The notes beneath the pieces were generated by a model that did not search any database, had not been told where the DNA came from, and saw only the letters and a list, made by a program, of their open reading frames with translations. DNA of 64,000 nucleotides from Macrostomum hystrix (Eukaryota > Animalia > Platyhelminthes): the NCBI GenBank assembly GCA_950097015.1, contig CATNEN010000003.1, positions 7,564,001-7,628,000 on the forward strand, in the 5' to 3' direction. Position numbers and translations under genes: made by a program. Positions 27,957-63,120 of this stretch are shown here, in pieces. Each line of letters opens with the position of its first letter. The stretch's first letter is position 1.

Positions 27957-29881
27957 TTAAAACTCTGCCATGCTCAGAAATGTCGCGTCGCCATTGTTGA
28001 GCTCTACGGAGTAAGCGCTCATAATGTTGGCCGATTGGAACAGCCAACAGGTTTGGTTAGCCGCCCGGAACATGACACAGAGACATTGCGGGTTTGTGAA
28101 GCAGTGAATTGTGCAGTGGACCATGGAGCTGGCAGTGGTAGTTGTAAGCGGCCCAGCTGATGCAGCTGAGAAACTGGGCAGACTCACCCGGTAGACTAGA
28201 GCTGTTGGTTTGGTGTCTAAAGCAGTTTACCGCAAGTGTGTCAGTACCTAATTCGTTTTCCTCCATTTTTAAACATGAAAATGATTAAGCTATGGACTGT
28301 TAAGCTACTCACAGAAAATGTCCACCTCACACATAGTTAACAAAACTGCGTCCCCTGTCTGTCCTGTGGTGTTTTTAAACACGGCCAAGTATCTACCGTC
28401 GACTGGTTGGGCGCAGTCGAAGCTCAAAGGATTGCTAGTCGACGTCGCTATGCCCGACCAGCTGATGCACCGGGTGAACAGGCTAGGGTTCATGATGCTC
28501 CACACTGTCGGATCCTTTGCGATTCCTATGAATGAAAAGCAGCTCAAACGTGTTTTTGTTCAATAAAGACTGGAAGTTGAAATTTGCCTTTTTATATACT
28601 AGGGTAATCAAGGTGCTCACCTATGCTGATCAGTCTGAGTCTGTCTGGGCAGCAGTCAATTCTGTTCCAAATTCGCACACCGGTCACAATGTACTGCCTA
28701 GTAAGATCCACCATCCACCAAGGGCTTAGATCCAAGTTGCTAGTAGCGAAACACTGCCTGGCGCCCGAATACACCCCGCTTGTGTCACCATTGTAGCTGA
28801 ACGCGCTATTAGATGCGGTTTCGTATTTCGATGAAATTTTAGTCGGCAAATTCTTGGGCACTGTCAGCGCTGAAATCGATTGAAGCCGTTTGTTGATTAT
28901 CAGTTCAGAATTAGGAATTAGCGGCCTCTGAGGGCTGTACAGCCCTCCAGTCCATGGACTGGGGCGTGGCACTATCTACGAGCTATTTATTTGCAGGGGA
29001 CCCGGGGCACTTGTCGCACAAGCGACGGAGTGGCACGCCCCCAGACCGGCGAACTAGGCGCTTAGCCCATCGCGCCGCCTCACCTGAGCGCCGGCGCCGC
29101 ACCACACACAGCAGCACAGACCAGCCGGGAGGCAGGAGGCACCCAGAATAGGCAGCAGTGCGGCCCCCACCCCAGCCCCACACGCACAGAGCAGACCAAG
29201 CCGGGGCGGAAGGCTGATAAGAAATCAGTCCTCAGAGGGGGCGGGTGATGCGTGTATACTTATCCAATCGCGCTGACGGAAATCCATGAAAGCGCGCGGC
29301 GGTGTACACCCGCCCCCAGCCACCCCCCGCAAGGCCTCACGCCCCAGCGCCAACGCACACAACTCACACAACGCAGAACAGGCACACAGAAAGGTAGGAG
29401 CGAAGCTATTATTTCAAGCTATTATTGCACGAAATATGGTGCACCTCCGCCGGTCGCTACTGTCCAAACCCTCCAACAGGTCCCGAAATTAATCGTGACT
29501 TGAAGGGAGAATCGAACTAGCGTCCATTGGAGTGCGAGGCAGCGACGCTAGCCGCTGACCCACTCGCCCTCGGGGCGTGGCACTAACAATTAGCCCATCT
29601 AATGCTGGAACCGAAAGGTGTCTTGCTAAATGACAAAATTTTTCCAATGTAGTCAGGAATCGAACCCTCGACCTTGTGGCCCTTGACTTACTTGACTTAT
29701 CTGCAGGGCGGTCCGATGGACACAGCGGGGAGGCGGGGGGACACATCAGGGATTAGCGGAATGGGCGACCTTGTGGCCCATGAATCACAGCTAGATTATG
29801 CTTACCACTTGTTAACTTCAGTTGCGAACAACAGACGAGAAGTACAGTGTTAAAAATGAAGGCTAAAGTAGTTTTTGCCAT
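27957..29881 (-). CDS. Secreted F-type lectin + PAN/apple protein, copy A; exons 29881-29806, 28869-28621, 28525-28313, 28216-27957 (265 aa)
   Basis: Signal-like MAKTTLAFIFNTVLLVCCSQLKLTS. F-type lectin domain (FTLD) motifs PWWMVDL, NRIDCCPDRL, GRYLAVF, LTMCEVDIF. PAN-like cysteine pattern HCTIHCFTNPQCLCVMF...CWLF. All introns are phase-1 GT-AG. Confidence 0.85.
28975..29571 (-). mobile_element. SINE family B (tRNA-derived, about 590 bp, GC-rich), copy 1
   Basis: A-box TGGGTCAGCGG and B-box-like AGTTCGATTC. 14-bp TSD GGGGCGTGGCACTA at 28961-28974 and 29572-29585. Confidence 0.88.
29683..29765 (-). mobile_element. About 83-bp 5'-truncated retroposon 3' end
   Basis: Flanked by 14-bp TSD CGACCTTGTGGCCC (29669-29682 and 29766-29779). 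Ends in CCCTGCAGATAAGTCAAGTAAGTCAA on the minus strand. Confidence 0.7.
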
Positions 29882-30373
29882 TAATTTTTTGTGAAATTGA
29901 ATTCAAACAAAAACATGAGTTTTTAGCTGCTTCCGATGTGGCAGAAGGCTGCTAAAGCTTGTTGCTAAGAAAACTTTTTAATTTATCCTTGGTCGCAGAA
30001 CCCAGAACACCTTCCTTCTAGCTCACCCACCCGTGACTTTAACACTTGCAGGGACAAGCCTTCCTGACAAATTTCCTCCCCAGAAAAGCGACTTTCTACT
30101 CACTGATCTGGGACTTCGGGAAGAGTAAGACTAGAAGCCTCACCAGCGCGGATGAGTTGTAAAAGTTCCTCCAAACACTCTTGCGACCCCCTTGATTGTA
30201 GCGTCGACCGTGTTGACTCCACTCCTGTCACGCATATTGTTTAAAAAAGTTTTTTACGGGACAATTTAAGACTTTTTAGGAAAAAGTGTGGGTTTTAAAA
30301 AACCTTAGCTTTCGTGCAGTGAATTCCTCTTCTGTGTGTCGCGGAAATTTTGTTAACATTTGTTCTGTAAATT

Positions 30374-32376
30374 ACTTCCATGCATATTCGACTCAATACT
30401 TTGACGCTACTTCCATGCATCTTCGACTCAATACTTTGACGCAACTTCCATGCATCTTCGACTCAATACTTTGACGCTAAGTACTTCCATGCATATTCGA
30501 CTCAATACTTTGACGCTACTTCCATGCATATTCGACTCAATACTTTGACGCAACTTCCATGCATCTTCGACTCAATACTTTGACGCTAAGTACTTCCATG
30601 CATCTTCGACTCAATACTTTGACGCTAAGTACTTCCATGCATATTCGACTCAATACTTTGACGCTAAGTACTTCCATGCATATTCGACTCAATACTTTGA
30701 CGCTACTTCCATGCATCTTCGACTCAATACTTTGACGCTAAGTACTTCCATGCATCTTCGACTCAATACTTTGACGCTACTTCCATGCATCTTCGACTCA
30801 ATACTTTGACGCTACTTCCATGCATCTTCGACTCAATACTTTGACGCTACTTCCATGCATCTTCGACTCAATACTTTGACGCTACTTCCATGCATATTCG
30901 ATTCAATACTTTGACGCTAAGTACTTCCATGCATCTTCGACTCAATACTTTGACGCTAAGTACTTCCATGCATCTTTGACTCAATACTTTGACGCTAAGT
31001 ACTTCCATGCATCTTCGATTCAATACTTTGACGCTAGTTCCATGCATCTTCGATTCAATACTTTGACGCTAGTTCCATGCATCTTCGACTCAATACTTTG
31101 ACGCAACTTCCATGCATCTTCGATTCAATACTTTGACGCTGCTTCCATGCATCTTCGATTCAATACTTTGACGCTAGTTCCATGCATCTTTGACTCAATA
31201 CTTTGACGCTAGTTCCATGCATCTTCGATTCAATACTTTGACGCTAGTTCCATGCACTATCGATTCAATACTTTGACGCTAGTTCCATGCATCTTCGACT
31301 CAATACTTTGACGCAACTTCCATGCATCTTCGACTCAATACTTTGACGCTGCTTCCATGCACTATCGATTAAATACTTTGACGCTAGTTCCATGCATCTT
31401 CGATTCAATACTTTGACGCTGCTTCCATGCATCTTCGATTCAATACTTTGACGCTACTTCCATGCATCTTCGATTCAATACTTTGACGCTGCTTCCATGC
31501 ATCTTCGATTCAATACTTTGACGCTAGTTCCATGCACTATCGATTCAATACTTTGACGCTAGTTCCATGCATCTTCGATTCAATACTTTGACGCTAGTTC
31601 CATGCATCTTCGATTCAATACTTTGACGCTGCTTCCATGCACTATCGATTCAATACTTTGACGCTAGTTCCATGCATCTTCGATTCAATACTTTGACGCT
31701 GCTTCCATGCATCTTCGACTCAATACTTTGACGCAACTTCCATGCATCTTCGACTCAATACTTTGACGCTGCTTCCATGCACTATCGATTAAATACTTTG
31801 ACGCTAGTTCCATGCATCTTCGACTCAATACTTTGACGCTGCTTCCATGCACTATCGATTAAATACTTTGACGCTAGTTCCATGCATCTTCGATTCAATA
31901 CTTTGACGCTGCTTCCATGCATCTTCGATTCAATACTTTGACGCTGCTTCCATGCATCTTCGATTCAATACTTTGACGCTAAGTACTTCCATGCATCTTC
32001 GATTCAATACTTTGACGCTACTTCCATGCATATTCGACTCAATACTTTGACGCTACTTCCATGCATCTTCGATTCAATACTTTGACGCTAGTTCCATGCA
32101 TCTTCGACTCAATACTTTGACGCTAGTTCCATGCATCTTTGACTCAATACTTTGACGCTAGTTCCATGCATCTTCGACTCAATACTTTGACGCTAAGTAC
32201 TTCCATGCATCTTCGATTCAATACTTTGACGCTAAGTACTTCCATGCATCTTCGACTCAATACTTTGACGCTAAGTACTTCCATGCATCTTCGACTCAAT
32301 ACTTTGACGCTACTTCCATGCATCTTCGATTCAATACTTTGATGCTGCTTCCATGCATCTTTGACTCAATACTTTG
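30374..32376. repeat. 35/39-bp minisatellite (CTTCCATGCATCTTCGACTCAATACTTTGACGCTA, with or without AGTA)
   Basis: Directly visible tandem units. Confidence 0.97.
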
Positions 32377-33221: not shown

Positions 33222-33254
33222 TACGAACAATACAAATTTGAATCAACGACCACT

Positions 33255-33982: not shown

Positions 33983-34049
33983 TTAGTTAGTTGATTTAAA
34001 TACATGAGACACTTTACCCGGATGGGCTATAATCGAGTGTACATACACA

Positions 34050-35110: not shown

Positions 35111-38100
35111 TCAACTGAGCTGCATAAATTTAGCGTCTTCTCTGCTCAGAACACTGGCCAGGCTGTCCGAGATGGTTCGGCTGGAAAACAGCCAGCAGTT
35201 CGACCGTCCTGACGTCAGGACGTACATGCACAGCGGCTCTGTGATGCACAAGTGAATGCATTCAATCCTGGATCGAACTGTCAGAGCTGATGGCGACAGC
35301 TGGTCAGTTGGTGGAGTGCTCAAAAGCTGCGGCTGAACAACTGTCGCAATTGCTGATTTCGATTGCTTCTGGACTGCAGGAAAAATAATTTTAAAGCTAT
35401 GGTGAAGTACTAGTCTGACATGTGAAATACTAGTCTGACATGTGAAATACTAGTCTGTCAGGTGAAATACTAGTCTGACAGGTGAAATACTAGTCTGACA
35501 GGGGAAATACTAGTCTGAAAGGTGAAATACTAGTCTGACAGGTGAAATACTAGTCTGACAGGTGAAATACTAGTCTGACAGGGGAAATACTAGTCTGACA
35601 TGTGAAATACTGGTCTGAAAGGTGAAATACTAGTCTGACAGGTAAAATACTAGTCTGACAGGTAAAATACTAGTCTGACAGGTGAAATACTGGTCTGAAA
35701 GGTGAAATACTAGTCTGACAGGTAAAATACTAGTCTGACAGGTGAAATACTAGTCTGACAGGGGAAATACTAGTCTGAAAGGTGAAATACTAGTCTGACA
35801 GGTGAAATACTGGTCTGAAAGGTGAAATACTAGTCTGACAGGTAAAATACTAGTCTGACAGGTGAAATACAAGTCTGACAGGTAAAATACTAGTCTGACA
35901 GGTAAAATACTAGTCTGAAAGGTGAAATACTAGTCTGAAATGTAAAATACTAGTCTGACAGGTGAAATACTGGTCTGAAAGGTGAAATACTAGTCTGACA
36001 GGTAAAATACTAGTCTGACAGGTGAAATACAAGTCTGACAGGTAAAATACTAGTCTGAAAGGTGAAATACTAGTCTGACAGGTGAAATACTAGTCTGACA
36101 GGTGAAATACTAGTCTGAAAGGTGAAATACTAGTTTGAAATGTGAAAAAAACTAGTCCGACAGGGGAAAAATATATTTTTAAACAGTTCTAAGAGTTAAA
36201 ATGCGAAAATCTCAATCAAGTAGTAAAACAAACTGTTTAATAGATATGCGTCTAGAAGGTAATTCGGTTAATAAAGAATGCCTAACAACGCTTTAGAAAA
36301 AGCTGCACAAAGGTATCTCGCCACATAATTTACCAGCAAAGACGTCGGCCTCACAAAAGTGCAGCCTAGCGCTGCCGTCAATCAGTCCAGTGGTGTTCTT
36401 GTAGACGGCCAAATACCTGCCACCAATGGGGCCAGGGCAGGTGTAAACAATGGGATTCTGGGCCACCGTAGCCACGCCGGGAAAATAGCCGCATTTGTCG
36501 AACAAGTCCTGGTTGAAATTGGTCCACACGATTGCTTTAGAAGCGATGCCTGAAATTTAAGCGACAATTTAATTCGAGTGTTTGCTAATAAATAGGATCT
36601 TCAACTACTTATTCTGGTTGCCCAGCGAGATGTTTTCGAGCCTGTTAGACAGAGTTCCACTGTAACTTTTTGTTTTAGATTGAGTGCTATATGCCTACCT
36701 TGTAATTGTGCTCATATTAATATTTATTATAATTTCAGGAGGGCTGCGGGCAATGGCACATTAATGGCACATGGTGACACTAGACCCGCAGCCAGCGAGA
36801 AGGCAATTCTGCCCATTCAACTGACTCCTGAGCACACACGCACACAACATACTGTACGCAAGCAATCGCTCACACTGGTGTGTACATCAGACCGGACTTT
36901 CTGCGGCAGTGCACACTCTCATTGCGCCCTGGTGGTCGGCCCTTAAGTACGTAAATTGCACGACAAGCCCCAAAGCCTTCTCTCCGCGGCTGCGCCCTAA
37001 ATGAATGTGGCCTCGCCGCGGAATCGAGCTCAGGGATGTCATTGCGAGAGGCAAACGCGTTAACCACTCTGCCACACCCCTTGTGCTCATAAAACTTAAA
37101 ATAAAAAAATACACACTTGAAAAAGCAACCACAAAATTTTTGGCTTTTGTAAGGTTTTCAAATTTATCAAAGCTAATACACCGGTAGCTTTTTAAATCTA
37201 AACTTAAAATCCTTTAAATCTTCGATCAATTACAAAACTTTTATATAAAAATAAAAAGCTAAAAATTTGCTGCCTACGCAAAAGCTTTTACGACTCGTAG
37301 AATAAGCTGTCAGTATTTCTGTCTGACAGCTAGTTGCTTATCTCTCTCTTAGTGGAATCAGAAAATAACACACGTTTTTTTCTTGGAAATCTTATCGTAG
37401 ACTTAGACAAAAGCGGAAAAGTAGTAACCTTTAGTTGCTTCCTAGAAACCCATTGATTTTTCTTAGAAAATCGTAATTTTTTCTTAGAAACGCTAATGGT
37501 AATATCTTATAGAAACAGAGGTTTTCTATCTAACGTCTGATCTCTGATGCAGAAATGTTGACTGCATGTACTTTAAACTTGTAAATCTGTTTTGCTATCG
37601 AGAAAATAATTATAATAATTGTATTTTTCGGGGAAAAAACTGACTTACCGACTGCCACCTGGCGATAACGATCCGTGCAGCAGTCGAGCCGATTCCAGAC
37701 TTGCACTTTGTAAACAAAATAAAACTGGCCCATGTCCAGCATCCACCAGGGTAGAGGGTCATTGTTGGCGCACTCAAAACAGTTGACAGTCCTGATTATT
37801 GAGCCGCCGGTGTTGCCATTGTTTCCCAAATTGGGATCGTCAGTTGAAACGTACTTCGAAGACATTTTCGCCTGAAGATGCTTCGGCACTGTGATCTCTG
37901 GAAATCCTGTTTTTAATAACAAAATCCTATAAAATTTTCACTTTTACACCACGCACAGGTGTGTACATCTGCCCAGACTTTCTCATCGTCAGGCAGTGTA
38001 CAATCTCACTGTGCCTCGGAGGTTGGCCCTCAAGGGCGTAAATTGTACGACAAGCCCCCAAGCCTTCTCTCTGCGGCTGCGCCCAAATAAATGTGGCCTC

Positions 38101-38578
38101 GCCGCGGAATCGAGCTCAGGGCCATTTCTTGCGAGAGGTAAATGCGTTTACCAGTCTGCCACTCACCCCCAGTACTAGCGGGAATTAGGTTAGCAATTTA
38201 AAATTACAATCGCATTCGTTATCATTTTATTAAAAACGGTAAAATTAATGTTTGTGTATTGATTTGTCCAGCTACATTGAGGTTAGTAGCCTACCGTTTA
38301 GAGCATCGGACTCACAAATGGATGGTCTGGTGTTCGATTCCCGAATTTGCTGTATAAATTTTTGTCCTTTAGTAAAAACAATGAACTATGCATTGCTCCA
38401 ATTCACTGTGAAATTGGTATCAGCATTAGTCCATTGACAGAACAGCTGTACACAGCCATCAGATACACAGCGCAATTAGATGCAATTTAAATACATGCAA
38501 CTTACCGAGCGTACTGGGCACAATGTCACAGCAGATAAGTAGCAGGAAAATACAATCCAGCAATTTTAACTTCTCCAT
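35111..38578 (-). CDS. Secreted F-type lectin + PAN protein, copy B; exons 38578-38506, 37897 (or 37906)-37649, 36549-36334, 35373-35111
   Basis: Signal-like MEKLKLLDCIFLLLICCDIVPSTL. Motifs PWWMLDM, NRLDCCTDRY, GGRYLAVY, LHFCEADVF. PAN pattern ECIHLCITEPLC...CWLF. Confidence 0.85.
35404..36160. repeat. 20-bp minisatellite (GGTGAAATACTAGTCTGACA) in intron 3 of copy B
   Basis: Directly visible tandem units. Confidence 0.96.
36735..37080 (-). mobile_element. SINE family A, full-length copy
   Basis: Matches the other copies from head to tail. Confidence 0.85.
37950..38170 (-). mobile_element. SINE family A, 5' half
   Basis: Head and hairpin block are present. Confidence 0.8.
38280..38440 (+). 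mobile_element. SINE family C, degenerate copy
   Basis: tagcctacc...tcggactcaca...gttcgattcc...tttgtcctttagtaaaaaca...tgcattgct..ttcac. Confidence 0.55.
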
Positions 38579-41189: not shown

Positions 41190-43284
41190 TTAAAATTTCG
41201 GCCAGCTAATCTGCATAAACTTGGCGTCCTTTTCGGTGACGAAGCTCGCGAAACTTTTTGGAAATGTTGAGCTCATGCTCAGACTGCAGCTTCTGTTGCT
41301 CGGGGCGTAGATAACGAACTCGCAGAACAAGGTCTCAAAGCACAACTGAGCACACTCAATGTCCGATCTTGATGCCAGGGGCTTGTCTACCAATGGGCTG
41401 ATAGCAGTTGCTGAGAAGCTAGGCTTGAAGACAGCGAATTCAACAAATAATTGCTGCACAGGAAGAGCTGAAACAGAGATGATTTTTTCAGTCTAACAGG
41501 TGAACACCTCTGTCTAACAGGTGAACACCTCTGTCTAACAGGTTAACACCTCTGTCTAACAGGTGAACACCTCTTAGTAACAGGTGAACACCTCTTAGTA
41601 ACAGGTGAACACCTCTTAGTAACAGGTGAACACCTCTTAGTAACAGGTGAACACCTCTTAGTAACAGGTGAACACCTCTTAGTAACAGGTGAACACCTCT
41701 GTCTAACAGGTGAACACCTCTGTCTAACAGGTGAACACCTCTTAGTAACAGGTGAACACCTCTGTCTAACAGGTGAACATCTCTATCTAACAGTTGGAAC
41801 GCATCATTTAAACGAAGGTTGGTACCACGCGACCCACTCACCGGCAAATACGTCCAATTCGCAGAAATGAAACAAATCAGATTTATTCGTCAGTCCGGTA
41901 ATATTTTTAAACACGCCCAGATAGCGACCAGCCAGCGGTGTCCAGCATTCAAAACTGAGCGGATTATTGGCAGCTGTTGGGATTTTATCCCAGACGAAGC
42001 ACAAACTGAACTGGTCCTTGTCAAATGTGCTCCAAACTGAATTGTTTGTCCCAATGCCTTCGGTTGAGCATAGAAAATGGGATTTCAATATAAATATATC
42101 CTTGAGCATTATGGTTGCTATCTACTAACAGTAGCAATGCTAATCTTGGACTCACCAATGCTCACTTGGGTGAAGCGTTCAGAGCAGCAGTTGATGCGAT
42201 TCCAGAATCGAACTCCGTACACCAGGTAGCTCTGTTCAAGATCCAACAACCACCAGGGCAGCTTGTCGCCAGTAGCCGTGTGAATGCACTGCATTCCTGG
42301 AACATACGTTCCAACTATGCTGCCATCGTAGGCGCTAACTGGCTCATCGGATGCGCTAAACTTTGATGAAATCCTTGTGGGCTTGTTTTTAGCAATTATT
42401 GATGTCCGGATTCCTGGAAAATAATATTATCCGACAATATTTTACCCTTTTAAGTGATACGTACTATCCGGACATGCGGTGATCCGATGTGAGACAGAGT
42501 TGCGTGACTGAGTGACCATCTGTGTGACTGAGTGACCATCTGTGTGACTGAGTGACCATCTGTGTCACTGAGAGATCATCTGTGTGACTGAGTGATCATC
42601 TGTGTGACTGAGTGACCATCTGTGTGACTGAGTGACCAACTGTGTGACTGAGAGATCATCTGTGTGACTGAGTGACCATCTGTGTGACTGAGTGACCAAC
42701 TGTGTGACTGAGTGACCATCTGTGTGACTGAGTGACCATCTGTGTGACTGAGTGACCAACTGTGTGACTAAGTGACCATCTGTGTGACTGAGTGACCATC
42801 CGTGTGACTGAGTGATCATCTGTGTGACTGAGTGACCATCTGTGTGACTGAGTGACCAACTGTGTGACTGAGTGACCATCTGTGTGACTGAGTGACCATC
42901 TGTGTGACTGAGTGATCATCTGTGTGACTGAGTGACCATCTGTGTGACTGAGTGATCATCTGTGTGACTGAGTGACCATCTGTGTGACTGAGTGACTATC
43001 TGTGTGACTGAGTGATCATCTGTGTGACTGAGTGACCATCTGTGTGACTGAGTAACCAACTGTGTGACTGAGAGACCATCTGTGTGACTGAGTGACCATC
43101 TGTGTGACTGAGTGACCATCTGTGTGACTGAGTGACCATCCGTGTGACTAAGTAACCATCTGTGTGACTTATTGAACCATTCAGTAAAATCTTTATCTGA
43201 AATATTTAACATTCACTTACCTATCGCCGAAACAACAGAGCAAGTGTATAACTGTATGACAAGCAAATAGAAGCAAATTTTCAT
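41190..43284 (-). CDS. Secreted F-type lectin + PAN protein, copy C; exons 43284-43221, 42413-42156, 42057-41842, 41467-41190
   Basis: Signal-like MKICFYLLVIQLYTCSVVSAI. QCIHTATGDKLPWWLLDL...NRINCCSERF, AGRYLGVF, FHFCELDVF. PAN pattern ECAQLCFETLFC...CSL. Confidence 0.87.
41490..41790. repeat. 21-bp minisatellite (TAACAGGTGAACACCTCTGTC / ...CTTAG) in intron 3 of copy C
   Basis: Directly visible tandem units. Confidence 0.95.
42505..43168. repeat. 20-bp minisatellite (TGTGTGACTGAGTGACCATC) in intron 1 of copy C
   Basis: Directly visible tandem units. Confidence 0.96.
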
Positions 43285-46668: not shown

Positions 46669-47770
46669 TCACTGAGGTCCGCTGAGCTTCATGAACTTGC
46701 TGCCGCTCTCCCGATAGACGCTGCTGAAGCCGGTTGGAATGCTGGCGAACTGAAACTGCCAGCAGCTGTTGTTGAGGCTCGAGTAGAGAGCAAACAGACA
46801 GAACAGCCGGTTCGAGCACTGAGCAATGCAATCGATGTCCGACCTCACGACCAGCGGCTCAGAGACCAACTGGCTGGTGTTTGACCCTGCTGAGAAGACG
46901 GGTTCCACGAGGCTGAACTCAACGAATGTCGGCTGCTGAGGTGTCGCTGGAACAAAAGCGTTGAAGCCAGATTTCATGTTCGATTTTACAATCAGACAGC
47001 TCACGAATGCTGCCTTGTGTTTTTTGCACTCACCCACGAATGTGTCAACTTCGCAAATGCCCAGTACTGTTTCACTCGTCGGAATGCCAGAAATGACCAT
47101 ATAGAAGGCCAGGTATCGGCCCAGTCTGGGAGAGGAGCAGACGAAGTTCAGCGGATTCTGACTCGCTGTGGGCACGAGGTCCCAAAACACGCACAAGCCG
47201 AAGAGGTTCTTGTTGAAATTAGTCCAGACAGAGGAGACCGAACTCACTCCTGAAATCGAATGGAGGAACGAGGAGAAAGTTCATTTGAGCAAATGTCAAT
47301 CAAATTAGAGGTAGCCCTTGTCCATGCAGCTCAACTCACCAATGCCAACTTGAGTAAATCTGCTAGAGCAGCAGTCGATGCGATTCCAGAATCGAACTCC
47401 GTACACCAGGTAGCTCTGCTCCAGGCCCAGCATACACCAGGGCAGAGCGTCTCCTACTGTCGTGTGAATGCACTGAACTCCAGCGATGTACTCGTAGTTT
47501 CCATTAGTGACGCCGTTATTTGCAATCATAGCATTATCATGCAGTTCACTCCACTTTGAAGACATTTTCGCCGGCTTGTTCTTGGCCAATAGAAATGCCT
47601 GATCACCTGCGTTTGGGGAAAAGCTTTTTCGTCAATTGTGCTAGATGGGTCAGGAATTCGTTTGAAAGAGTAAAGTATTTAAAATTTTACTTTCCAAAGT
47701 TAGGTTGAATAAAGACTCAGAGAAGTGTAAAGGTGTTGACACGTAGGATATTATTCATTTTGGTTTCCAT
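46669..47770 (-). pseudogene. F-type lectin + PAN copy D, recently inactivated; exons 47770-47695, 47606-47340, 47249-47034, 46946-46669
   Basis: Compared with near-identical copy F: TGC>TGA stop in exon 1 (47717-47719), intron-1 donor GT>GA (47694-47693), L>R in the signal h-region, PWWMLDL>PWCMLGL. Confidence 0.82.
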
Positions 47771-48755
47771 TTTGACCGCTTGTTGAAATTTTTCTTTGGT
47801 TAGTTACAATGAATTAAAAAGAATGTAGAAACTGCTGCAATAATGGAATGTTGGAGATCTTTTGCCATTGGCTCCTGTTTAAACTCAGGATTATAGTTTG
47901 TTGAGTCCTTGTTAAACAAAAGTACCTGAACTGTATCAATTAAGCTACTGCATATTTTCTGGTATTTTCCGGTTCCAGCTGCAGCTCATGTGTCAGTTGA
48001 CAGAAACAGCAATGTACGCAAAATTGGCGATATAACTTTGTCAATTTTATCGCGAAGCATCGATCTATTTTAGCCTTCCTGATTGGAAAAAAGGCTGAAA
48101 CGAGAGGCAGTTTCTAACTCATATTTCATGCCCGGAATGCGTGAAAAAATACTTCAATTCTTCCCATCGTTATCTGCAAAAACAAAAAAGTTTTTTGAGT
48201 GTATGGCATTTAAACTCAGGTTAAAATAGCATGAGTAAAGCTTAAAGGCAAATAAGCAATTAAATTTTCGTAAAAAAGCTTAGCGCAACTGCAACGAAAG
48301 TGTAAGTAATGAGTTTATCGGCAACGTTAAATTCATTGCTCAAATATATATTTCTTCTGGATAGGTTTTTACCAGTTTTATTTAGCTTGTCATGCGAGTG
48401 GGACAACAAAAGTTACAAGTCTCAAATTCCACCAATAGTGTGCGTCAGCCCTAACACAAGAATCTCTAGGATATTTAAAATCATTCTACTCGGACGAAAA
48501 ATACCTCTCTGAGTTTGCAGGTCACTAAAAGTACATTATTATACCCCGCGATTCAAATTTTAAACTCAGAGTGAATGTTTGGACAAAGAAGTATATGTTG
48601 CGGTAGAAATGGAATCTTTACACGGTACGTATGTACCATCAGTGATAAATTCTCTCTGTTTAATCAAATGTGTTTGGAAACATTTCACAATAATCCATAA
48701 TTGTTATAAATCTTATAACTCTTTCTCCTATTATTATAACAGCTGATGAGCACTG

Positions 48756-49861
48756 TTACTGTGGCCCGCTGAGCTTCATGAACTTGCTGCCGCTCTCCCG
48801 ATAGACGCTGCTGAAGCCGGACGGAATGCTGGCGAACTGAAACTGCCAGCAGCTGTTGTTGAGGCTCGAGTAGAGAGCAAACAGACAGAACAGCCGGTTC
48901 GAGCACTGAGCAATGCAATCGATGTCCGACCTCACGACCAGCGGCTCAGAGACCAACTGGCTGGTGTTTGACCCTGCTGAGAAGACGGGTTCCACGAGGC
49001 TGAACTCAACGAATGTCGGCTGCTGAGGTGTCGCTGGAACAAAAGCGTTGAAGCCAGATTTCATGTTTGATTTTACAATCAGACAGCTCACGAATTCTGC
49101 CTTGTGTTTTTTGCACTCACCCACGAATGTGTCAACTTCGCAAATGCCCAGCAGATTCTCGGGTGTCGGGATGCCAGAAATGACCATATAGAAGGCCAGA
49201 TATCGGCCCAGTCTGGGAGAGGAGCAGACGAAGTTCAGCGGATTCTGACTCGCTGTGGGCACGAGGTCCCAAAACACGCACAAGTCGAAGAGGTTCTTGT
49301 TGAAATTAGTCCAGACAGAGGAGACCGAACTCACTCCTGAAATCGAATGGAGCTAGGAACAATGAGTAACATCCTTTGCTGAGCAAGCGACAAACCGATT
49401 GGAGGTAGCCCTTGTTTATTCAGCTCAACTCACCAATGCCAACTTGAGTAAATCTGCTAGAGCAGCACTCGATGCGATTCCAGAATCGAACTCCGTACAC
49501 CAGGTAGGTCTGCTCAAGGTCCAGCATCCACCAGGGCAGTCCGTCTCCGTCTTTCGTGTGAATGCACTGAAATCCAGGGATGTAGGTTCCATCAGTGACG
49601 CCGTTATTTGCAATCATAGCATTATCGAGTTCACGCCACTTAGAAGACATTTTCGCGGGCTTGTTCTTGGCCAATAGAAATGCCTGATCACCTGCATGTG
49701 GGAAAATGTTTTATCATCAGGTGTGCTAGTCGGGTCAGGAATTAATCCAAACGAGTTGGAAAATTCATTTGCATGACAATCTTACCAAATGTAAATTGAA
49801 TGTGGACAAGTAGCAGCACAAACGTTTTCACAAGCAGGATGACATCTATTTTGGCTTCCAT
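48756..49861 (-). CDS. Secreted F-type lectin + PAN protein, copy E; exons 49861-49786, 49691-49434, 49336-49121, 49033-48756
   Basis: Signal-like MEAKIDVILLVKTFVLLLVHIQFTFG. CIHTKDGDGLPWWMLDL...NRIECCSSRF. PAN pattern DCIAQCSNRLFC...CWQF. Confidence 0.88.
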
Positions 49862-51760: not shown

Positions 51761-51769
51761 TTAAGCGCA

Positions 51770-54632: not shown

Positions 54633-54809
54633 CCAAGTTCACTGTTTAAATAAAAAGCTTGATAAAGTTTTCAATTAGCACGGTGTACTTTTCCATATTG
54701 TATATTGGAGGGGTAAAATATTAATCTTAAAACATAAGCACGCATAAAATATCTAAAGAACTGAAATTATTTGAGCGAATGAGATTCTAATTACAGCTGA
54801 AGAGCATTG

Positions 54810-55904
54810 TTACTGAGGTCCGCTGAGCTTCATGAACTTGCTGCCGCTCTCCCGATAGACGCTGCTGAAGCCGGTCGGAATGCTGGCGAACTGAAACTGC
54901 CAGCAGCTGTTGTTGAGGCTCGAGTAGAGAGCAAACAGACAGAACAGTCGGTTCGAGCACTGAGCAATGCAATCGATGTCCGACCTCACGACCAGCGGCT
55001 CAGAGACCAACTGGCTGGAGTTTGACCCTGCTGAGAAGACGGGTTCCACGAGGCTGAACTCAACGAATGTCGGCTGCTGAGGTGTCGCTGGAACAAAAGC
55101 GTTGAAGCCAGATTTCATGTTTGATTTTACAATCAGACAGCTCACGAATGCTGCCTTGTGTTTTTTGCACTCACCCACGAATGTGTCAACTTCACAAATG
55201 CACAGTACTGTTTCACTCGTCGGGATGCCAGAAATGACCATATAGAAGGCCAGATATCGGCCCAGTCTGGGAGAGGAGCAGACGAAGTTCAGCGGATTCT
55301 GACTCGCTGTGGGCACGAGGTCCCAAAACACGCACAAGTCGAAGAGGTTCTTGTTGAAATTAGTCCAGACAGAGGAGACCGAACTCACTCCTGAAATCAA
55401 ATGGAGGAACGAGGAGAAAGTTCATTTGAGCAAATGTCAATCAAATTAGAGGTAGCCCTTGTCCATGCAGCTCAACTCACCAATGCCAACTTGAGTAAAT
55501 CTGCTAGAGCAGCAGTTGATGCGATTCCAGAATCGAACTCCGTACACCATGTAGCTCCGCTCAAGGTCCAGCATCCACCAGGGCAGAGCGTCTCCTCCGG
55601 CTGTGTGAATGCACTGCACTCCAGAGGTGTAGGTTCCATTAGTGACGCCGTTATTTGCAATCATAGCATTATCATGCAGTTCACTCCACTTTGAAGACAT
55701 TTTCGCGGGCTTGTTCTTGGCCAATAGAAATGCCTGATCACCTGCGTTTGGGAAAAGCTATTTCGTCAATTGTGCTAGATGGGTCAGGAATTCGTTTGAA
55801 AGAGTAAAGAATTTAAAATTTTACTTACCAAAGTTAGGTTGAATAAAGACGCAGAGAAGTGTAAAGGTGTTGACAAGTAGGATATTATTCATTTTGGTTT
55901 CCAT
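54810..55904 (-). CDS. Secreted F-type lectin + PAN protein, copy F; exons 55904-55829, 55741-55481, 55390-55175, 55087-54810 (276 aa)
   Basis: Signal-like METKMNNILLVNTFTLLCVFIQPNFG. CIHTAGGDALPWWMLDL...NRINCCSSRF. Splice sites intact. Confidence 0.88.
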
Positions 55905-56892
55905 TTTGACCGCTTGTTGAAATCTTTCTTTGGTTAGTTAAAATGAATTAAAAAGAATGTAGAGACTGCTGCAATAATGGAATGTTGGAGATCTTTCGCC
56001 ATTGGCTCCTGTTTAATCTCAGGATTATAGTTTGTTGAGTCCTTGTTAAACAAAAGTACTTGAACTGTATCAAATAAGCTACTGCATATTTTCTGGTATT
56101 TTCCGGTTCCAGCTGCAGCTCATGTGTCAGTTGACAGAAACAGCAATGTACGCAAAATTGGCGATATAACTTTGTCAATTTTATCGCGAAGCATCTATTT
56201 TAGCCTTCCTGATTGGAAAAAAGGCTGAAACGAGAGGCAGTTTCTAACTCATATTTCATGCCCGGAATGCCTGAAAAAATACTTCAATTCTTCCCATCGT
56301 TATCTGCAAAAAGAAGAAACTTTTTGAGTGTACGGCATTTAAACTCAGGTTAAAATAGCATGAGTAAAGCTTAAAGGCAAATAAGCAATTAAATTTTCGT
56401 AAAAAAGCTTAGCGCAACTGCAACGAAAGTGTAAGTAATGAGTTTATCGGCAACGTTAAATTCATTGCTCAAATATATATTTCTTCTGGATAGGTTTTTA
56501 CCAGTTTTATTTAGCTTGTCATGCGAGTGGGACAACAAAAGTTACAAGTCTCAAATTCCACCAATATAGTGTGCGTCAGCCCTAACACAAGAATCTCTAG
56601 GAGAATAAAAATCATTCTACTAGGACGAAAAATACCTCTTTGAGTTTGCAGGTCACTAAAAGTACAATTTTTACCCTGCGATTCAAATTTTAAACTGAGT
56701 GAATGTTTGGACAAAGAAGTATATGTTGCGGTAGAAATGGAATCTTTACACTGTACATATGAACCACCAGTGATAAATTCTCCCCGTTTAATCAAATGTG
56801 TTTGGAAACATTTCACAACAATCCATAATTGTTATAACTCTTATAAATCTTATAACTCTTTCTCCTATTATTATAACAGCTGATGAGCACTG

Positions 56893-58082
56893 TTACTGTG
56901 GCCCGCTGAGCTTCATGAACTTACTGCCGCTCTCCCGATAGACGCTGCTGAAGCCGGTTGGAATGCTGGCGAACTGAAACTGCCAGCAGCTGTTGTTGAG
57001 GCTCGAGTAGAGAGCAAACAGACAGAACAGTCGGTTCGAGCACTGAGCAATGCAATCGATGTCCGACCTCACGACCAGCGGCTCAGAGACCAACTGGCTG
57101 GTGTTTGATCCTGCTGAGAAGACGGGTTCCACGAGGCTGAACTCAACGAATGTCGGCTGCTGAGGTGGCGCTGGAACAAAAGCGTTGCCAATGCCTTGAT
57201 TTTACAAGCCTTTATGACCAAAATTGTTTTTAAATTAATTACTCTACCAATTTGTGACTAAGATAATCTTAAAATGCTGCGAAACAAGAAGGTCAAGTCA
57301 AGTAAAAAAATATTAAAATATGTTTTGCGTTATGACTTGTGTACCTATTTTACGCTACTTAGGTAAAAAAAAAATTTTTCACTTACCCACGAATATGTCA
57401 ATCTCGCAGAAATGAAACAAAGTGTTTGCCGATGGTAGCCCTGTAAAGCTCTTGTACATAGTCAGGTATCGACCTAGTGTGGAAGGCGAGCAAGCCAATG
57501 CGATCGGATTCTCGCTGTCTGTTGGCATCGGGTCCCAGTATGCACATAGGCTGAATAGATTCTTGTTGAAAGTAGACCAAACGGATGAGTCCATTGTCAC
57601 TCCTGAAATTGAAGTATTGGAACTCAAAAACTGTACTCGAAGAGGCCAAAATATTGTTTTCTTTGTCTATGAGTCGCATTCGAATGATGGCATTTACAAC
57701 AAAAGAAGAATGAATTGGGTCGCAGAGAATTTATGCATCGTAAAAGGAATTATGACAAACAAATGACCTTTGGCCATTGCCATCAAATGCAGCCAATGAC
57801 TTTCTAATAGTTTGGATCGCTCACCAACGCTTATTTTATTAAACCTGCTAGAGCAGCAGTCGATGCGATTCCAGACTCGAACTCCGTGCACCAGGTAGCT
57901 CTGCTCAAGGTCCAGCATCCACCAGGGCAGTGCGTCTCCTCCGGCTGTGTGAATGCACTGCACTCCAGATGTGAAGGTTCCACTAGTGATGCCGTTATTT
58001 GCTATCATAGCATTTTCAAGTACACTCCACTTTGAAGACATTTTCGCCGGCTTGTTCTTGGCCAATAGAAATGCCTGATCAC
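56893..58082 (-). CDS. F-type lectin + PAN copy G; exons 58082-57825, 57602-57387, 57170-56893; no intact signal exon found
   Basis: CIHTAGGDALPWWMLDL...NRIDCCSSRF, TLGRYLTMY, FHFCEIDIF; PAN exon as in copies D-F. A candidate exon 1 at about 58774-58825 looks frameshifted. Confidence 0.75.
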
Positions 58083-58149
58083 CTTGAAATTAAGTTTCAA
58101 GTCGGTGCCTTAATTGTATTGTCCCTCTAGTGGTGCTGCCTGGGCATGG

Positions 58150-58415
58150 GTTGTGCGTCACGTGGGTGAGCTCGATTCCGCGTCGAGGCCACATTAATTT
58201 GAGTTGCTTGTTAGCTTGTTGTGCTATTTCAATGCGTCATCTTGGGCCAACCACCAAGGCAAAGGGAAAGTGTACATTTCCTGACGATTAAACATTTTTG
58301 TAGCAGATTTACACGTTTTTGTGAGTGTGAGCCCAGCGTACAGTACGTGTTGGGGTGCGTTCGCAGGAGTCAGCGAAACGGACAGAATCACGTCCCCGCT
58401 GGCTACTGGTCTAGT
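58150..58415 (+). mobile_element. SINE family A, degenerate copy
   Basis: gagctcgattccgcgtcgaggccacatt...caggagtcagcgaaa...gctggct..ggtctag. Confidence 0.7.
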
Positions 58416-58939
58416 TTTCCTCTTCTAATTTTAAAAGCTCCTGCAGTTAGCTTATTTGAAGAAAAATACTAGTAATTAATTAGCCGTTGGTTATGAACAA
58501 AGCAAAACGTACCAAGCGTCGGTATAATCAGAGCAATCATCAGTACACTGATTGTCTGAATTAAGATTCCAGAATCGAGTTTTTCCATTGCTGCGTTAGC
58601 TAGGAAACAGAAGTATTTTGTCCGTTTTGAACGTTTGTGTCCGATCTAGAGAATTCTAGCAGAAAGCTAGTATGCAGAATAAGAATATTGTGAGTTTTTA
58701 AGTACTTTTTTAAGTTTATTGCTTCTGATTGGCTAGAAAAAGTAGGAGCTGTTTTACTCGTAAAATAACTTACAGCTAAATTTTGCAAAGTCGCAAAGCA
58801 CAAGTTTTCACAAGCCTTATCATTTCATTAACCCTAACGAAACCAAAAAAGGCGCTAACACATATAAACCCTACATTTCAGAAACCCATGTTTTCGCACA
58901 ACTTCGAAAACGCCAGTTTTCACAGCCCTGGCTTCTGAC

Positions 58940-59630: not shown

Positions 59631-59631
59631 C

Positions 59632-61790: not shown

Positions 61791-62417
61791 TCATAACACT
61801 TTATCCCTTAAAAACAGAACTAAGAATCGCTCCTTGAAATGTTTTAGCAAGCGAGTTTTTATCATTCTGCGTTGCAGAATTTTTCACATATGTTTGTACA
61901 TCAATAATGTTATAATTATTTAATCGAAGATTTTTTAAATTGTATAGACAGTGCCAGATAAAAGTTTTTCAAAAAGTCTAAAATACAGCTAAACTTTTGC
62001 TGTCGACTGTCACAAATGTCAGAGAGTCCGTGCTCAGTTTATCGCTACGTAATAATCATACCAGTCAATAATTGACAGAGTTTAGCTTTAAAATAAATTT
62101 CAATCAACCATTTCTACGAGCCGTATCAATCAATATGGAGTGTTAGTGAAATACATTTGATGTGATGTAGTCTGCTGAGCAGCCTCCAGGCAATATGTGG
62201 AGTCAGCGCTGCCCTAGTGCTGTGGGAGGGCTTGGGAGTAGGAAGTCTGCGGGTACCCGTGCACACTCACCTCCGCTCGCCACTGACTGCGCACTGACTT
62301 CTCAGGTGTGGAATCGTCTAGACTATGGAGCTGAGAAGTTTACTTAAGTTTCTGTTGGTAAGGACTCAATTTCACTGGTTTGCGGCTGTGGAAAATGACC
62401 GACTATTTCCTTTGCAG

Positions 62418-62887
62418 ACACCGAATCACAAACCTTCCTCACACCGAATCACAAACCTTCCTCACACCGAATCACCAACCTTCCTCACACCGAATCACCA
62501 ACCTTCCTCACACCGAATCACCAACCTTCCTCACACCGAATCACCAACCTTCCTCACACCGAATCACCAACCTTCCTCACACCGAATCACCAACCTTCCT
62601 CACACCGAATCACAAACCTACCTGACACCGAATCACCAACCTTCCTCACACCGAATCACCAACCTTCCTCACACCGAATCACAAACCTTCCTCACACTGA
62701 ATCACCAACCTTCCTCACACTGAATCACACACCTACCTGACACCGAATCACAAACCTTCCTCACACCGAATCACAAACCTTCCTCACACCGAATCACCAA
62801 CCTTCCTCACACCGAATCACAAACCTTCCTCACACCGAATCACCAACCTTCCTCACACCGAATCACCAACCTTCCTCACACCGAATT
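62418..62887. repeat. 23-bp minisatellite (CACACCGAATCACCAACCTTCCT)
   Basis: Directly visible tandem units. Confidence 0.95.
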
Positions 62888-62915
62888 ACCACAAAATTCG
62901 CAATAACTTTTACAG

Positions 62916-63120
62916 GTGTGACGTCATTATCTTCCATCTGGAGTACATTCATAATCAACAGGTTTCAACTCTGCATGTACTGGACAGGTATTCCTAACGT
63001 CACAACAAATCCAATAAGTTTTACCTGTAAATCTCCGATTGCTGGTCGTTTCCTGAGTGTTTTCAAAAGGAATCAAGACCTAGATGGTGGCAAACTTTTG
63101 TGAGATCGAAATTTTCGCTG
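62916..63120 (+). pseudogene. Inverted F-type lectin remnant (copy H): frameshifted exon-3 homologue
   Basis: tacag|GVTSLSSIWSTF...LCMYWTGIP...NPISFTCKSPIAGRFLSVFK, then a frameshift to FCEIEIFAG|gtaag. Length is 205 nt versus 213-216 nt in the intact paralogues. Confidence 0.75.

What the first reader, a model, noticed from the sequence alone, without database searches (positions are those of the whole stretch)
27957..63120. Tandem array of at least 7 secreted F-type-lectin/PAN genes: candidate diversifying glycan-recognition system
Seen: seven same-strand copies (A-G) share one 4-exon, all-phase-1 layout (signal | FTLD half 1 | FTLD half 2 of 213-216 nt | PAN), plus an inverted remnant H. 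No transmembrane segment is visible. The array includes old divergent copies (A, B, C), very young copies (D-G) and dead copies (D, H, possibly G), which is a birth-and-death pattern. Established: F-type lectins bind fucose through an H-X~26-R-X-D-X4-R motif framed by CDR-like loops, and act in innate immunity and in gamete recognition (oyster bindin). Inference: this is a lineage-specific repertoire of soluble recognition proteins for immunity, microbiome control, mucus/adhesion or mating, with a variable lectin head and a more constant PAN tail.
Basis: partly seen in the sequence, partly recalled or inferred. Interest (0 to 1): 0.85.

Follow-up and report, generated by a model that had tools for sequence, protein, structure and literature searches.

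The report
Flatworm F-type lectin–PAN gene cluster
A Macrostomum flatworm carries seven neighbouring genes (six intact, one dead) and one inverted wreck for small secreted proteins made of a fucose-lectin domain plus a PAN/apple domain. This is a real but fairly ordinary invertebrate lectin expansion, and relatives are already catalogued in M. lignano and in mussels.

Summary
Seven minus-strand genes (A-G) share a four-exon, all-phase-1 plan: signal peptide, F-type lectin (FTLD) half 1, FTLD half 2 of 213-216 nt, PAN. An inverted degenerate copy H lies beside G.

- **Identity:** profiles of the exons hit solved fucolectins (FBP32 5.7e-17, eel agglutinin 8.8e-10). The PAN exon folds confidently into a PAN/apple module.
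- **Expression:** spliced contigs in three runs (kind not on record; I read them as RNA) remove exactly the three predicted introns of gene E.
- **Copy number:** contig depths in a run the tool guesses to be DNA argue against haplotype artefacts.
- **State of copies:** D is dead (stop in exon 1, lost splice donor). G looks intact, not "possibly dead". H is a wreck.
- **Binding site:** the His/Arg/Arg fucose triad is complete in C-G. A and B lack the His, and B's His-to-Glu change recurs in the closest M. lignano protein.
- **History:** the young copies are a mosaic of a two-gene segmental duplication and exon-bounded gene conversion.
- **Selection:** dN/dS is below 1 in every exon. "Diversifying" selection is not shown.

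About 20 such genes and at least 109 FTLD first-half matches exist genome-wide. UniProt lists M. lignano homologues, and Mytilus has FTLD-PAN proteins. This scan found related PAN-lectin families before on other DNA of this genome. Function is untested.

The parts
27957..29881 (-). Gene A, intact and old. Exons 29881-29806 | 28869-28621 | 28525-28313 | 28201-27957. The His of the triad is replaced (CFAT).
   Evidence: Models and splice sites. Pfam gives F5_F8_type_C_2 at 32.8 bits and PAN_1 at 25.8 bits, both above the gathering scores. Intron 1 holds a 587-bp interspersed repeat. The exon 2 donor (28621 rather than 28600) and the exon 4 acceptor (28201 or 28195) were chosen by homology and have no RNA check.
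35111..38578 (-). Gene B, intact and old. Exons 38578-38506 | 37906-37649 | 36549-36334 | 35373-35111. His is replaced by Glu (CFEC).
   Evidence: Its exons are 70-77% identical to an M. lignano protein (P0003 / A0A1I8HY10 cluster) that keeps the same CFECANNDPLPWW stretch. Introns 1-3 are inflated by repeats and a minisatellite.
41190..43284 (-). Gene C, intact and old. Exons 43284-43221 | 42413-42156 | 42057-41842 | 41467-41190. The triad is complete; R-x-D reads RIN.
   Evidence: PAN_1 scores 25.1 bits, above the gathering score. Minisatellites lie in introns 1 and 3.
46669..47770 (-). Gene D, a young pseudogene. Exons 47770-47695 | 47606-47340 | 47249-47034 | 46946-46669.
   Evidence: Exon 1 has an in-frame TGA and its donor reads GA instead of GT. 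PWW reads PWC and MLDL reads MLGL. The spliced (apparently RNA) contigs touch D's exons only at a 73-nt PAN piece identical in E. A D-specific contig of the guessed-DNA run has single-copy depth.
48756..49861 (-). Gene E, intact and expressed. Exons 49861-49786 | 49691-49434 | 49336-49121 | 49033-48756. The triad is complete; R-x-D reads RIE.
   Evidence: Contigs of three runs, which I read as RNA because they lack the introns, join 49033|49121, 49335|49433 and 49689|49784. These are exactly the three predicted introns, with no mismatch. One contig spans 48674-49917.
54810..55904 (-). Gene F, intact and young. Exons 55904-55829 | 55741-55481 | 55390-55175 | 55087-54810. The triad is complete; R-x-D reads RIN.
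   Evidence: F is 95-99% identical to D across exons and introns.
56893..58588 (-). Gene G, intact and mosaic. Exons 58588-58513 | 58082-57825 | 57602-57387 | 57170-56893. It has the full canonical H..RIDCCSSR motif.
   Evidence: Exons 2 and 4 are 87-98% identical to D/E/F, exon 3 only 66%, and the introns are unrelated. dS against D/E/F is 1.4-1.9 in exon 3, against 0.07-0.21 in exons 2 and 4.
62303..63103 (+). Copy H, an inverted degenerate copy lying head to head with G. It has a half-1 remnant (62303-62356, in-frame stop, Cys-Cys lost), a 23-mer minisatellite, and a truncated half 2 (about 62885-63103).
   Evidence: Its open PAN exon lies outside the window at G000:C3:7630088-7630321.
46624..49050 (.). 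Segmental duplication block 1 (D, spacer, exon 4 of E). It matches 54762-57187 (F, spacer, exon 4 of G) at 95.7%.
   Evidence: Self-blastn and per-segment identities.
54762..57187 (.). Segmental duplication block 2 (F, spacer, exon 4 of G).

Best explanation
This is a lineage-specific tandem cluster of genes for small (about 260-278 aa) secreted two-module lectins. Each protein has a signal peptide, one F-type lectin domain split over two exons, a flexible linker and one C-terminal PAN/apple module.

In copies C-G the FTLD keeps the His/Arg/Arg triad, the vicinal Cys-Cys and the other disulfide cysteines. It most likely binds terminal alpha-L-fucose on glycans, and the surrounding loops set which fucosylated glycan is preferred (inferred). 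A and B lack the His. B's Glu recurs in the closest M. lignano protein, so these copies probably bind something else or bind differently (inferred). The PAN module supplies a second binding or oligomerising surface, which would let the protein cross-link or tether targets (inferred).

The cluster grew by old duplications (A, B, C), a recent two-gene segmental duplication (D-E to F-G), unequal crossover in intron 3 and gene conversion confined to exons 2 and 4. It lost copies by pseudogenisation (D, H).

The cluster is one local part of a family of about 20 genes and of a far larger FTLD expansion in this genome. The physiological role is not established. Extracellular glycan recognition at surfaces or in mucus (defence or microbe handling) is my first guess, and reproductive secretions my second.
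For: - **Gene models and phases:**
- **FTLD by sequence:** the half-1 profile hits FBP32 (3cqo, 5.7e-17), eel agglutinin (1k12, 8.8e-10) and streptococcal fucose modules. The half-2 profile hits 3cqo at 0.0027. Pfam F5_F8_type_C_2 scores above its gathering score on the half-1 exons of A and B.
- **Triad mapping:** His52/Arg79/Cys82-83/Arg86 were mapped through the alignment, with residue roles from PMC5712786.
- **FTLD by fold:** the model of the closest full-length relative (M. lignano P0003, 70-77% identical to B's lectin exons) has F-type lectins at ranks 1-11. The best is 1k12 at E 3e-12, TM 0.81 on the target. The linker has low confidence.
- **PAN:** PAN_1 matches 15 of 18 family members. 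All PDB profile hits are PAN/apple proteins. The model has pLDDT 88.8, with Z 7.5 to the HGF N domain and Z 7.1 to the PAN lectin SML-2.
- **Secretion:** hydrophobic N-termini and no internal stretch reaching KD19 of 1.6.
- **Expression and splicing of E:**
- **Real copies:** a D-specific contig has depth 71, unique flanks 70-75, and shared segments 135-233.
- **Mosaic history:**
- **Family size:**
- **Relatives in M. lignano and Mytilus:**
Against: - No sugar binding was tested.
- E and C/F have RIE and RIN in place of R-x-D, and A and B lack the His, so some copies may not bind fucose.
- The signal peptide rests on a heuristic, not a trained predictor.
- Only E was shown to be expressed.
- The spliced window proteins themselves were never searched or folded. 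All tests were exon by exon or on M. lignano relatives.
- The run with the depth figures is only guessed to be DNA, and it may be the sample the assembly came from.
Confidence: 0.75

Rival explanations
1. The array is a diversifying recognition system in which positive selection drives amino-acid change in the ligand-binding loops, while the PAN tail is held constant.
For: Among D-G, amino-acid differences in half 1 fall mainly in the stretches aligned to the loops around His52 and Arg79 of the eel lectin. Half 1 has the highest dN/dS of the exons, at 0.5-0.75. Between D and F, exon 2 is less alike (92%) than the introns beside it (95-99%).
Against: No exon and no partition reaches dN/dS of 1 or more. 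In the loop columns pS (0.21) is raised even more than pN (0.11), compared with the framework (0.07 and 0.06). This fits patches of older ancestry or gene conversion. The near-identity of PAN goes with very low dS (0.03-0.09), so it reflects recent copying, not only constraint. Among A, B and C, PAN is the most divergent part. The test rests on only four sequences, one of them a pseudogene.
Confidence: 0.15
2. The proteins act in reproduction (seminal fluid, sperm or egg coats) of this hermaphrodite, as oyster bindin does, rather than in defence or mucus.
For: F-type lectins include gamete-recognition proteins (the role is cited in PMC5712786). The family shows rapid turnover and species-restricted young copies.
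Against: No tissue information was obtained. The runs that hold E transcripts are of unknown tissue. The text searches found no paper linking Macrostomum with F-type lectins.
Confidence: 0.2
3. The FTLD has become a non-lectin scaffold, and the proteins are structural or protein-binding matrix components.
For: Many family members elsewhere in the genome have lost the Cys-Cys, the His or the R-x-D. A and B lack the His. PAN modules often bind proteins.
Against: C-G keep the whole triad and all the disulfide cysteines. Purifying selection acts on both lectin exons.
Confidence: 0.12
4. The young copies D-G are assembly or haplotype artefacts.
For: D/F and the exon-4 segments are 95-99% alike. Short-read contigs break inside them.
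Against: A D-specific contig has the same depth (71) as the unique flanks (70-75), and segments shared by two to four copies have 135-233. The copies differ in exon 1, in introns and in exon 3, which is not how alleles differ. E-specific spliced transcripts match the assembly exactly.
Confidence: 0.03

Closest known systems
F-type lectins (fucolectins): eel agglutinin AAA (1K12), striped bass FBP32 (3CQO)
   Same: They share the sequence profile, the His/Arg/Arg triad, the vicinal Cys-Cys, the C-terminal CE-x-D/E motif and the jelly-roll fold. Like these, the cluster's proteins are secreted and belong to tandem, lineage-specific gene expansions.
   Different: The flatworm proteins have a single FTLD followed by a PAN/apple module. 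The two F-type lectin reviews that I searched for the terms PAN and apple do not mention that partner. A and B lack the His, and E, C and F alter the Asp of R-x-D.
Macrostomum lignano 'FTP domain-containing' / 'F5/8 type C domain-containing' proteins (UniProt A0A1I8J2T0, A0A1I8HTE8, A0A1I8HY10, A0A1I8J762, A0A1I8GQN0; NCBI PAA87090.1)
   Same: They have the same three-part architecture and length, and the exon junctions fall at the same residues. P0003 is 70-77% identical to B's lectin exons and shares its His-to-Glu change.
   Different: They come from another species and carry automatic names only. None of the listed cluster representatives is more than 42-56% identical to A, C or D-G, so the D-G clade looks specific to this lineage.
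Bivalve FTLD-apple proteins (Mytilus edulis CAG2187346.1 'Apple domain-containing protein'; Mytilus californianus XP_052075918.1 'fucolectin-1-like')
   Same: These are small proteins with one FTLD followed by a PAN-like module. For the M. edulis protein, Pfam gives F5_F8_type_C plus PAN_1 above the gathering scores.
   Different: The sequence relation is distant. PAN is supported only by my family profile for the M. californianus protein. Whether the fusion is shared by descent or arose twice was not tested.
PAN/apple lectins of apicomplexans (Sarcocystis SML-2, Toxoplasma MIC4)
   Same: The PAN exon model aligns to SML-2 with Z 7.1, rmsd 3.1 Å over 69 residues and 23% identity. This shows that a PAN module can itself bind galactose-type sugars.
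   Different: No sugar-binding residues were compared. The resemblance is of fold only.
Other PAN-plus-lectin families of this same genome (earlier scan notes s1-395443, s1-398627, s1-394548, s1-847263)
   Same: They are also small secreted proteins in tandem arrays that combine a PAN-like module with a lectin-type fold.
   Different: According to those notes, PAN sits at the front and the partner is a LamG, fibrinogen or other fold. Here PAN is the C-terminal tail behind an FTLD. I did not test those notes.

Membership tests
F-type lectin domain (FTLD; SMART FTP) | Significant match to profiles or sequences of established F-type lectins | tested here: met
   The half-1 exon profile hits 3cqo at 5.7e-17, 1k12 at 8.8e-10 and 2j1r at 1.2e-5. 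Half 2 hits 3cqo at 0.0027. Pfam PF22633 scores above its gathering score on the half-1 exons of A and B. Full-length M. lignano relatives score above the gathering scores for PF00754 and PF22633.
F-type lectin domain (FTLD; SMART FTP) | Fucose-binding motif H-x(24-27)-R-x-D-x4-R/K, with the His/Arg/Arg triad | tested here: inconclusive
   Both Arg residues are invariant in A-G. The His is present in C-G and is replaced in A (Ala) and B (Glu). The Asp is present in A, B, D and G; it is Glu in E and Asn in C and F. The full motif is met by D (dead) and G. The triad alone is met by C-G.
F-type lectin domain (FTLD; SMART FTP) | Vicinal Cys-Cys in the binding site, plus the two other disulfide pairs | tested here: met
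   The Cys before the His, the Cys-Cys pair, two Cys in half 2 and the Cys of the CE-x-D motif are invariant in A-G. They align with AAA Cys50 and Cys82-83. Pairing itself is inferred.
F-type lectin domain (FTLD; SMART FTP) | F-type jelly-roll fold | tested here: met
   This was tested on the closest full-length relative, not on a window protein. In the model of M. lignano P0003, FTLD blocks have pLDDT 77-97. Foldseek ranks 1-11 are all F-type lectins; 1k12 scores E 3e-12 with TM 0.81 on the target.
F-type lectin domain (FTLD; SMART FTP) | Binding of L-fucose or fucosylated glycans | not testable with these tools
   This needs recombinant protein and a glycan array or inhibition assays.
PAN/apple domain | Match to the Pfam PAN models | tested here: met
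   PAN_1 scores 25.8 bits (A) and 25.1 bits (C) against a gathering score of 21.4. D-G score 16-18 bits, below the cut-off. 15 of 18 family members match PAN_1 at E of 0.1 or less.
PAN/apple domain | Conserved core cysteines (C-x3-C-x5-C-x9-13-C here) | tested here: met
   Four Cys are invariant in 18 family members. The fifth and sixth cysteines of true apple domains are absent, so this is a minimal PAN, not a six-Cys apple domain.
PAN/apple domain | PAN fold (helix packed on a curved sheet) | tested here: met
   The AF2 model of E's PAN exon has pLDDT 88.8 and pTM 0.80. Foldseek's top 40 or so hits are PAN, apple or MANEC modules, though at weak E values. VIA-align gives Z 7.5 with rmsd 3.2 Å over 74 residues (HGF N domain) and Z 7.0-7.1 (SML-2, factor XI). 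Z below 8 alone would be weak; here it agrees with the sequence hits.
Secreted soluble protein | Cleavable signal peptide and no membrane anchor | tested here: inconclusive
   This rests on a hydropathy heuristic only. N-terminal KD19 is 1.6-2.2 in the intact copies, and there is no internal window of 1.6 or more. No trained signal-peptide or GPI predictor was available.

The most novel reading that the evidence does not exclude
Exon-bounded gene conversion and unequal crossover between neighbouring copies act as a shuffling device. They recombine lectin half-domains and loop variants on a homogenised PAN tail, giving the worm a combinatorial set of glycan specificities. This set would include a conserved His-to-Glu type (B) with a non-fucose ligand. 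It would be used for partner/gamete or microbe discrimination.
Probability: 0.1. Interest if true: 0.6.

Novelty: new member of a known kind. Interest (0 to 1): 0.3.

Why it matters
The finding adds a well-delimited locus of flatworm F-type lectins, with splicing verified for one gene (E). The FTLD-plus-PAN architecture sits unremarked in databases for M. lignano and Mytilus, and the F-type lectin reviews I checked do not mention it. The locus is a clean small case of birth-and-death evolution with exon-bounded gene conversion. It also offers natural binding-site variants (His to Glu or Ala, Asp to Glu or Asn) for specificity studies. It does not open a new kind of system. Lineage-specific lectin expansions are common in invertebrates, and this genome has several.

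Tried and rejected
- **Word-indexed protein search:** a search with the E half-2/intron/PAN read-through ORF found nothing. The exhaustive profile search later found the M. lignano relatives, so that blank was a sensitivity limit.
- **Rfam:** no RNA family in the window reaches its gathering score.
- **Literature:** no paper holds both 'Macrostomum' and 'F-type lectin'. The Macrostomum 'lectin domain' hits listed concern mostly bioadhesion, judging by titles and abstracts. The two F-type lectin reviews do not mention PAN or apple partners.
- **Apparent chimeric transcript:** run X4 shows a joint from D's PAN exon to E's exon 3 (46946 to 49121). I rejected it, because the 73 nt are identical in D and E, so it is E's normal intron 3.
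- **Per-exon trees:** these are too short to decide whether A, B and C are closer to D-G than to dispersed family members. Only the D-G clade is well supported, and C groups with D-G in the PAN tree only.
- **Loop versus framework dN/dS:** no positive-selection signal.
- the spliced window proteins were read only inside scripts to check frames. They were not sent to any search or fold tool, and all searches went exon by exon by reference. As a result, no window protein was folded whole.

Full report
**What is there**

Earlier notes of this scan identify the genome as a Macrostomum flatworm. One note names M. hystrix. I did not verify the species, but the best public relatives are M. lignano proteins. 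The window is G000:C3:7564001-7628000.

tblastn of exon peptides against the window finds seven minus-strand sets of three coding blocks between 27957 and 58082. It also finds one plus-strand fragment near 62885-63100, and nothing in the first 27.9 kb.

Reading the DNA of copy E gave a four-exon model with GT-AG introns, all in phase 1. The same plan could be laid on all seven copies:
- Exon 1 is 64-76 nt and encodes a hydrophobic leader.
- Exon 2 is 249-267 nt.
- Exon 3 is 213 nt in A and 216 nt in B-G.
- Exon 4 is 245-278 nt and runs to the stop codon.
- The proteins are 260-278 aa.
- Hydropathy shows an N-terminal hydrophobic core in the intact copies and no internal transmembrane-like stretch. 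This is a heuristic, not a trained predictor.

**Is it transcribed and real?**

Three runs of one 2020 study hold contigs that lack exactly the three predicted introns of E. The tool lists their kind as unknown; I read them as RNA because of the spliced contigs. The joints are 49033|49121, 49335|49433 and 49689|49784. There is no mismatch, and one contig runs from 48674 to 49917.

One contig seemed to join D's last exon to E's third. The 73 nt concerned are identical in D and E, so this is E's ordinary splice.

The only contig piece of these runs laid on D's exons was this ambiguous 73-nt PAN segment. This shows no presence, and it does not prove silence.

A 2023 run that the tool guesses to be DNA gives these contig depths:

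| Segment | Depth |
|---|---|
| Unique flanks | 70-75 |
| D-specific piece of exon 2 | 71 |
| Segments shared by two to four copies | 135, 184, 233 |

That is what real paralogues give, not split haplotypes. This run may be the assembly's own sample. Only one laying call, of at most 6 kb, was available, so A, B, C, F and G have no RNA check.

**What the exons encode**

*Lectin domain, first half.* A profile of the seven exon-2 peptides hits the solved fucolectins:
- FBP32 (3cqo) at 5.7e-17
- eel agglutinin AAA (1k12) at 8.8e-10
- the pneumococcal fucose module (2j1r) at 1.2e-5
- lectinolysin

*Lectin domain, second half.* The exon-3 profile hits 3cqo at 0.0027 and 1k12 at 0.064, through the G-R-Y and C-E-V-D/E motifs. 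Pfam places exon 2 in F5_F8_type_C_2 and F5_F8_type_C.

*Binding-site residues.* The alignment gives AAA numbering. The residue roles come from PMC5712786: His52, Arg79, Arg86, and the Cys82-Cys83 vicinal disulfide.
- Both Arg residues, the Cys-Cys pair and the other disulfide cysteines are invariant in A-G.
- The His is present in C-G. It is Ala in A and Glu in B.
- The Asp of R-x-D is Glu in E and Asn in C and F.

*PAN domain.* Exon 4 matches Pfam PAN_1 above the gathering score in A and C and below it in D-G. Of 18 family members in the genome, 15 match PAN_1. Every PDB hit of the family profile is a PAN/apple protein. An AlphaFold model of E's exon-4 peptide is confident, with pLDDT 88.8. 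It aligns to the HGF N domain (Z 7.5, rmsd 3.2 Å over 74 residues), to the PAN lectin SML-2 (Z 7.1) and to factor XI apple domains (Z 7.0). Four cysteines are invariant, so it is a minimal PAN module, not a six-cysteine apple domain.

*Whole-domain fold.* I could not send a spliced window protein to the fold tool. Instead I folded the closest full-length relative that a search returned. This is M. lignano P0003, which is 70% and 76% identical to B's two lectin exons. The alignment included the window's exon peptides. The lectin part is confident, and the linker before PAN is not. Foldseek's first eleven hits are all F-type lectins, headed by AAA at E 3e-12 with TM 0.81 on the target. CBM32 and discoidin domains follow. 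In that alignment the exon junctions of my models fall at the same residues as in the M. lignano proteins.

**State of each copy**

- A, B, C, E, F and G have open frames and canonical splice sites.
- D has a TGA in exon 1, and its first donor reads GA. It also has PWC in place of PWW and G in place of D in the strand after it.
- H lies head to head with G. It keeps 18 residues of the end of half 1, with a stop and without the Cys-Cys. A 23-mer minisatellite follows, then a half 2 cut short by a stop. A still-open PAN exon lies 3 kb on, outside the window.

**History of the cluster**

A, B and C are saturated at synonymous sites against all the others.

Among the young copies, 46624-49050 (D, spacer, E's exon 4) equals 54762-57187 (F, spacer, G's exon 4) at 95.7%. 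Segment-by-segment identities show the following:
- D and F are 95-99% alike through exons and introns, but 92% in exon 2.
- E shares exons 2-4 and intron 3 with D and F, but has a different exon 1 and 5' flank.
- G shares only exon 2 (87-91%), exon 4 (97-98%) and, with E, the 3' flank (90%).
- G's introns are unrelated to the others and longer, and its exon 3 is 66% alike.

For G against D/E/F, dS is 1.4-1.9 in exon 3, but 0.14-0.21 in exon 2 and 0.07-0.09 in exon 4.

The simplest account is a two-gene segmental duplication or unequal crossover with a breakpoint in intron 3, plus gene conversion limited to exons where the introns share no homology. This agrees with another first-stage note on this stretch (s1-840812).

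**Is it diversifying?**

Pairwise dN/dS among D-G is 0.5-0.75 in exon 2, 0.2-0.3 in exon 3 and 0.05-0.18 in exon 4.

Amino-acid differences in exon 2 do fall mostly in the stretches that align with the loops around His52 and Arg79. In those columns, however, synonymous change is raised as well. pS is 0.21 against 0.07 in the framework, and pN is 0.11 against 0.06. That pattern fits patches of different ancestry better than selection on point mutations.

With four sequences, one of them a pseudogene, and evident conversion, the test is weak. The claim is unshown, not disproved.

The "constant PAN tail" is a feature of D-G only. Their PAN exons are 98-99% identical with very low dS. Among A, B and C, PAN is the least conserved part, at 25-42% identity to E.

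**Context in the genome and beyond**

Profiles of the three exon types find about 20 loci in the genome with half 1, half 2 and PAN in order. Most lie on the same contig, and one has two lectin domains before the PAN. Several of these have lost the Cys-Cys, the His or the R-x-D.

The half-1 profile alone gives at least 109 matches, including dense arrays elsewhere.

An exhaustive profile search of 1.84 billion representative proteins returns five small proteins at E 1e-31 to 1e-44, each with two matched stretches.
- All five are M. lignano entries. Those that carry a name are called 'FTP domain-containing' or 'F5/8 type C domain-containing' protein.
- All five carry half 1, half 2 and PAN by my profiles.
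- P0003 keeps B's His-to-Glu stretch. This suggests that B's variant site is maintained rather than decaying.
- No listed representative is closer than 42-56% to A, C or D-G.

Outside flatworms, the Mytilus edulis protein CAG2187346.1 ('Apple domain-containing protein') has an FTLD followed by PAN_1 above the gathering score. Mytilus californianus XP_052075918.1 is similar by my profiles. A Ruditapes protein has the reverse order.

The two F-type lectin reviews I searched list C-type lectin, H-type lectin, pentraxin, CCP and FA58C partners, and mention planaria, but not PAN.

**Verdict**

The domain assignment is correct.

The biological reading, a diversifying recognition system, goes beyond the evidence. 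What stands is an ordinary, lineage-specific tandem expansion of secreted two-module lectins, evolving by duplication, conversion and loss.

Close relatives are already in public databases under automatic names. This scan also noted related PAN-plus-lectin families before in the same genome.

**Limits**

- The joined spliced proteins of the window were not searched or folded.
- Expression was checked for D and E only.
- No function was tested.

Noticed in passing
window 28983-29569 (+), 61049-61626 (+), 44308-44870 (inverted): A 587-bp GC-rich interspersed repeat. One copy sits inside intron 1 of gene A. The genome search gave 544 first-look candidates, and all 40 that were scored are 92-94% identical. 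It is probably a young non-autonomous mobile element, and it has no Rfam match.
   Followed up: partly
window 5172-5508, 9502-9801, 17734-18061, 36745-37082, 37954-38169, 43820-44157, 51434-51731, 63621-63954: A second interspersed repeat of about 300-340 bp, 75-87% alike, in both orientations. Two copies lie in introns of gene B.
   Followed up: no
window 30373-32376, 35401-36169, 38988-41135, 41491-41793, 42504-43169, 59633-61045, 62418-62891: Long minisatellites (periods 12-35) fill the spacers and the long introns of the old copies B and C. The young copies keep introns of about 90 nt. The minisatellites might favour unequal exchange in the array.
   Followed up: no
G000:C3:4452982-4462500; G000:C1:6621207-6637046; G000:C1:5978688-5982476: Dense runs of F-type lectin first-half matches spaced 0.5-1 kb apart. 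These are either multi-domain fucolectins or further tandem arrays. The genome has at least 109 such matches.
   Followed up: no
L003 (G000:C3:2126001-2130500), minus strand: A family member with two successive lectin domains (half 1 + half 2, twice) followed by one PAN. In both domains the His reads Cys (CTCT) and the Cys-Cys pair is lost.
   Followed up: partly
protein P0155 (M. lignano A0A1I8HY10, 994 aa): This predicted protein contains two complete B-like FTLD-PAN units in tandem. It is probably two neighbouring genes fused by the gene predictor, which would mean B-like genes are tandemly duplicated in M. lignano too.
   Followed up: no
L001:8094-8330 (G000:C3:7630088-7630321, just beyond the window's end): The PAN exon downstream of the wrecked copy H is still an open frame with all four core cysteines, although H's lectin exons are broken.
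   Followed up: partly
window 70-798 (+), 3270-3554 (-), 24310-24975 (-): Unrelated neighbours, judged by eye from the translations: a membrane-transporter-like C-terminal ORF, a stomatin/band-7-like exon and a reverse-transcriptase-like fragment. None of these was searched.
   Followed up: no
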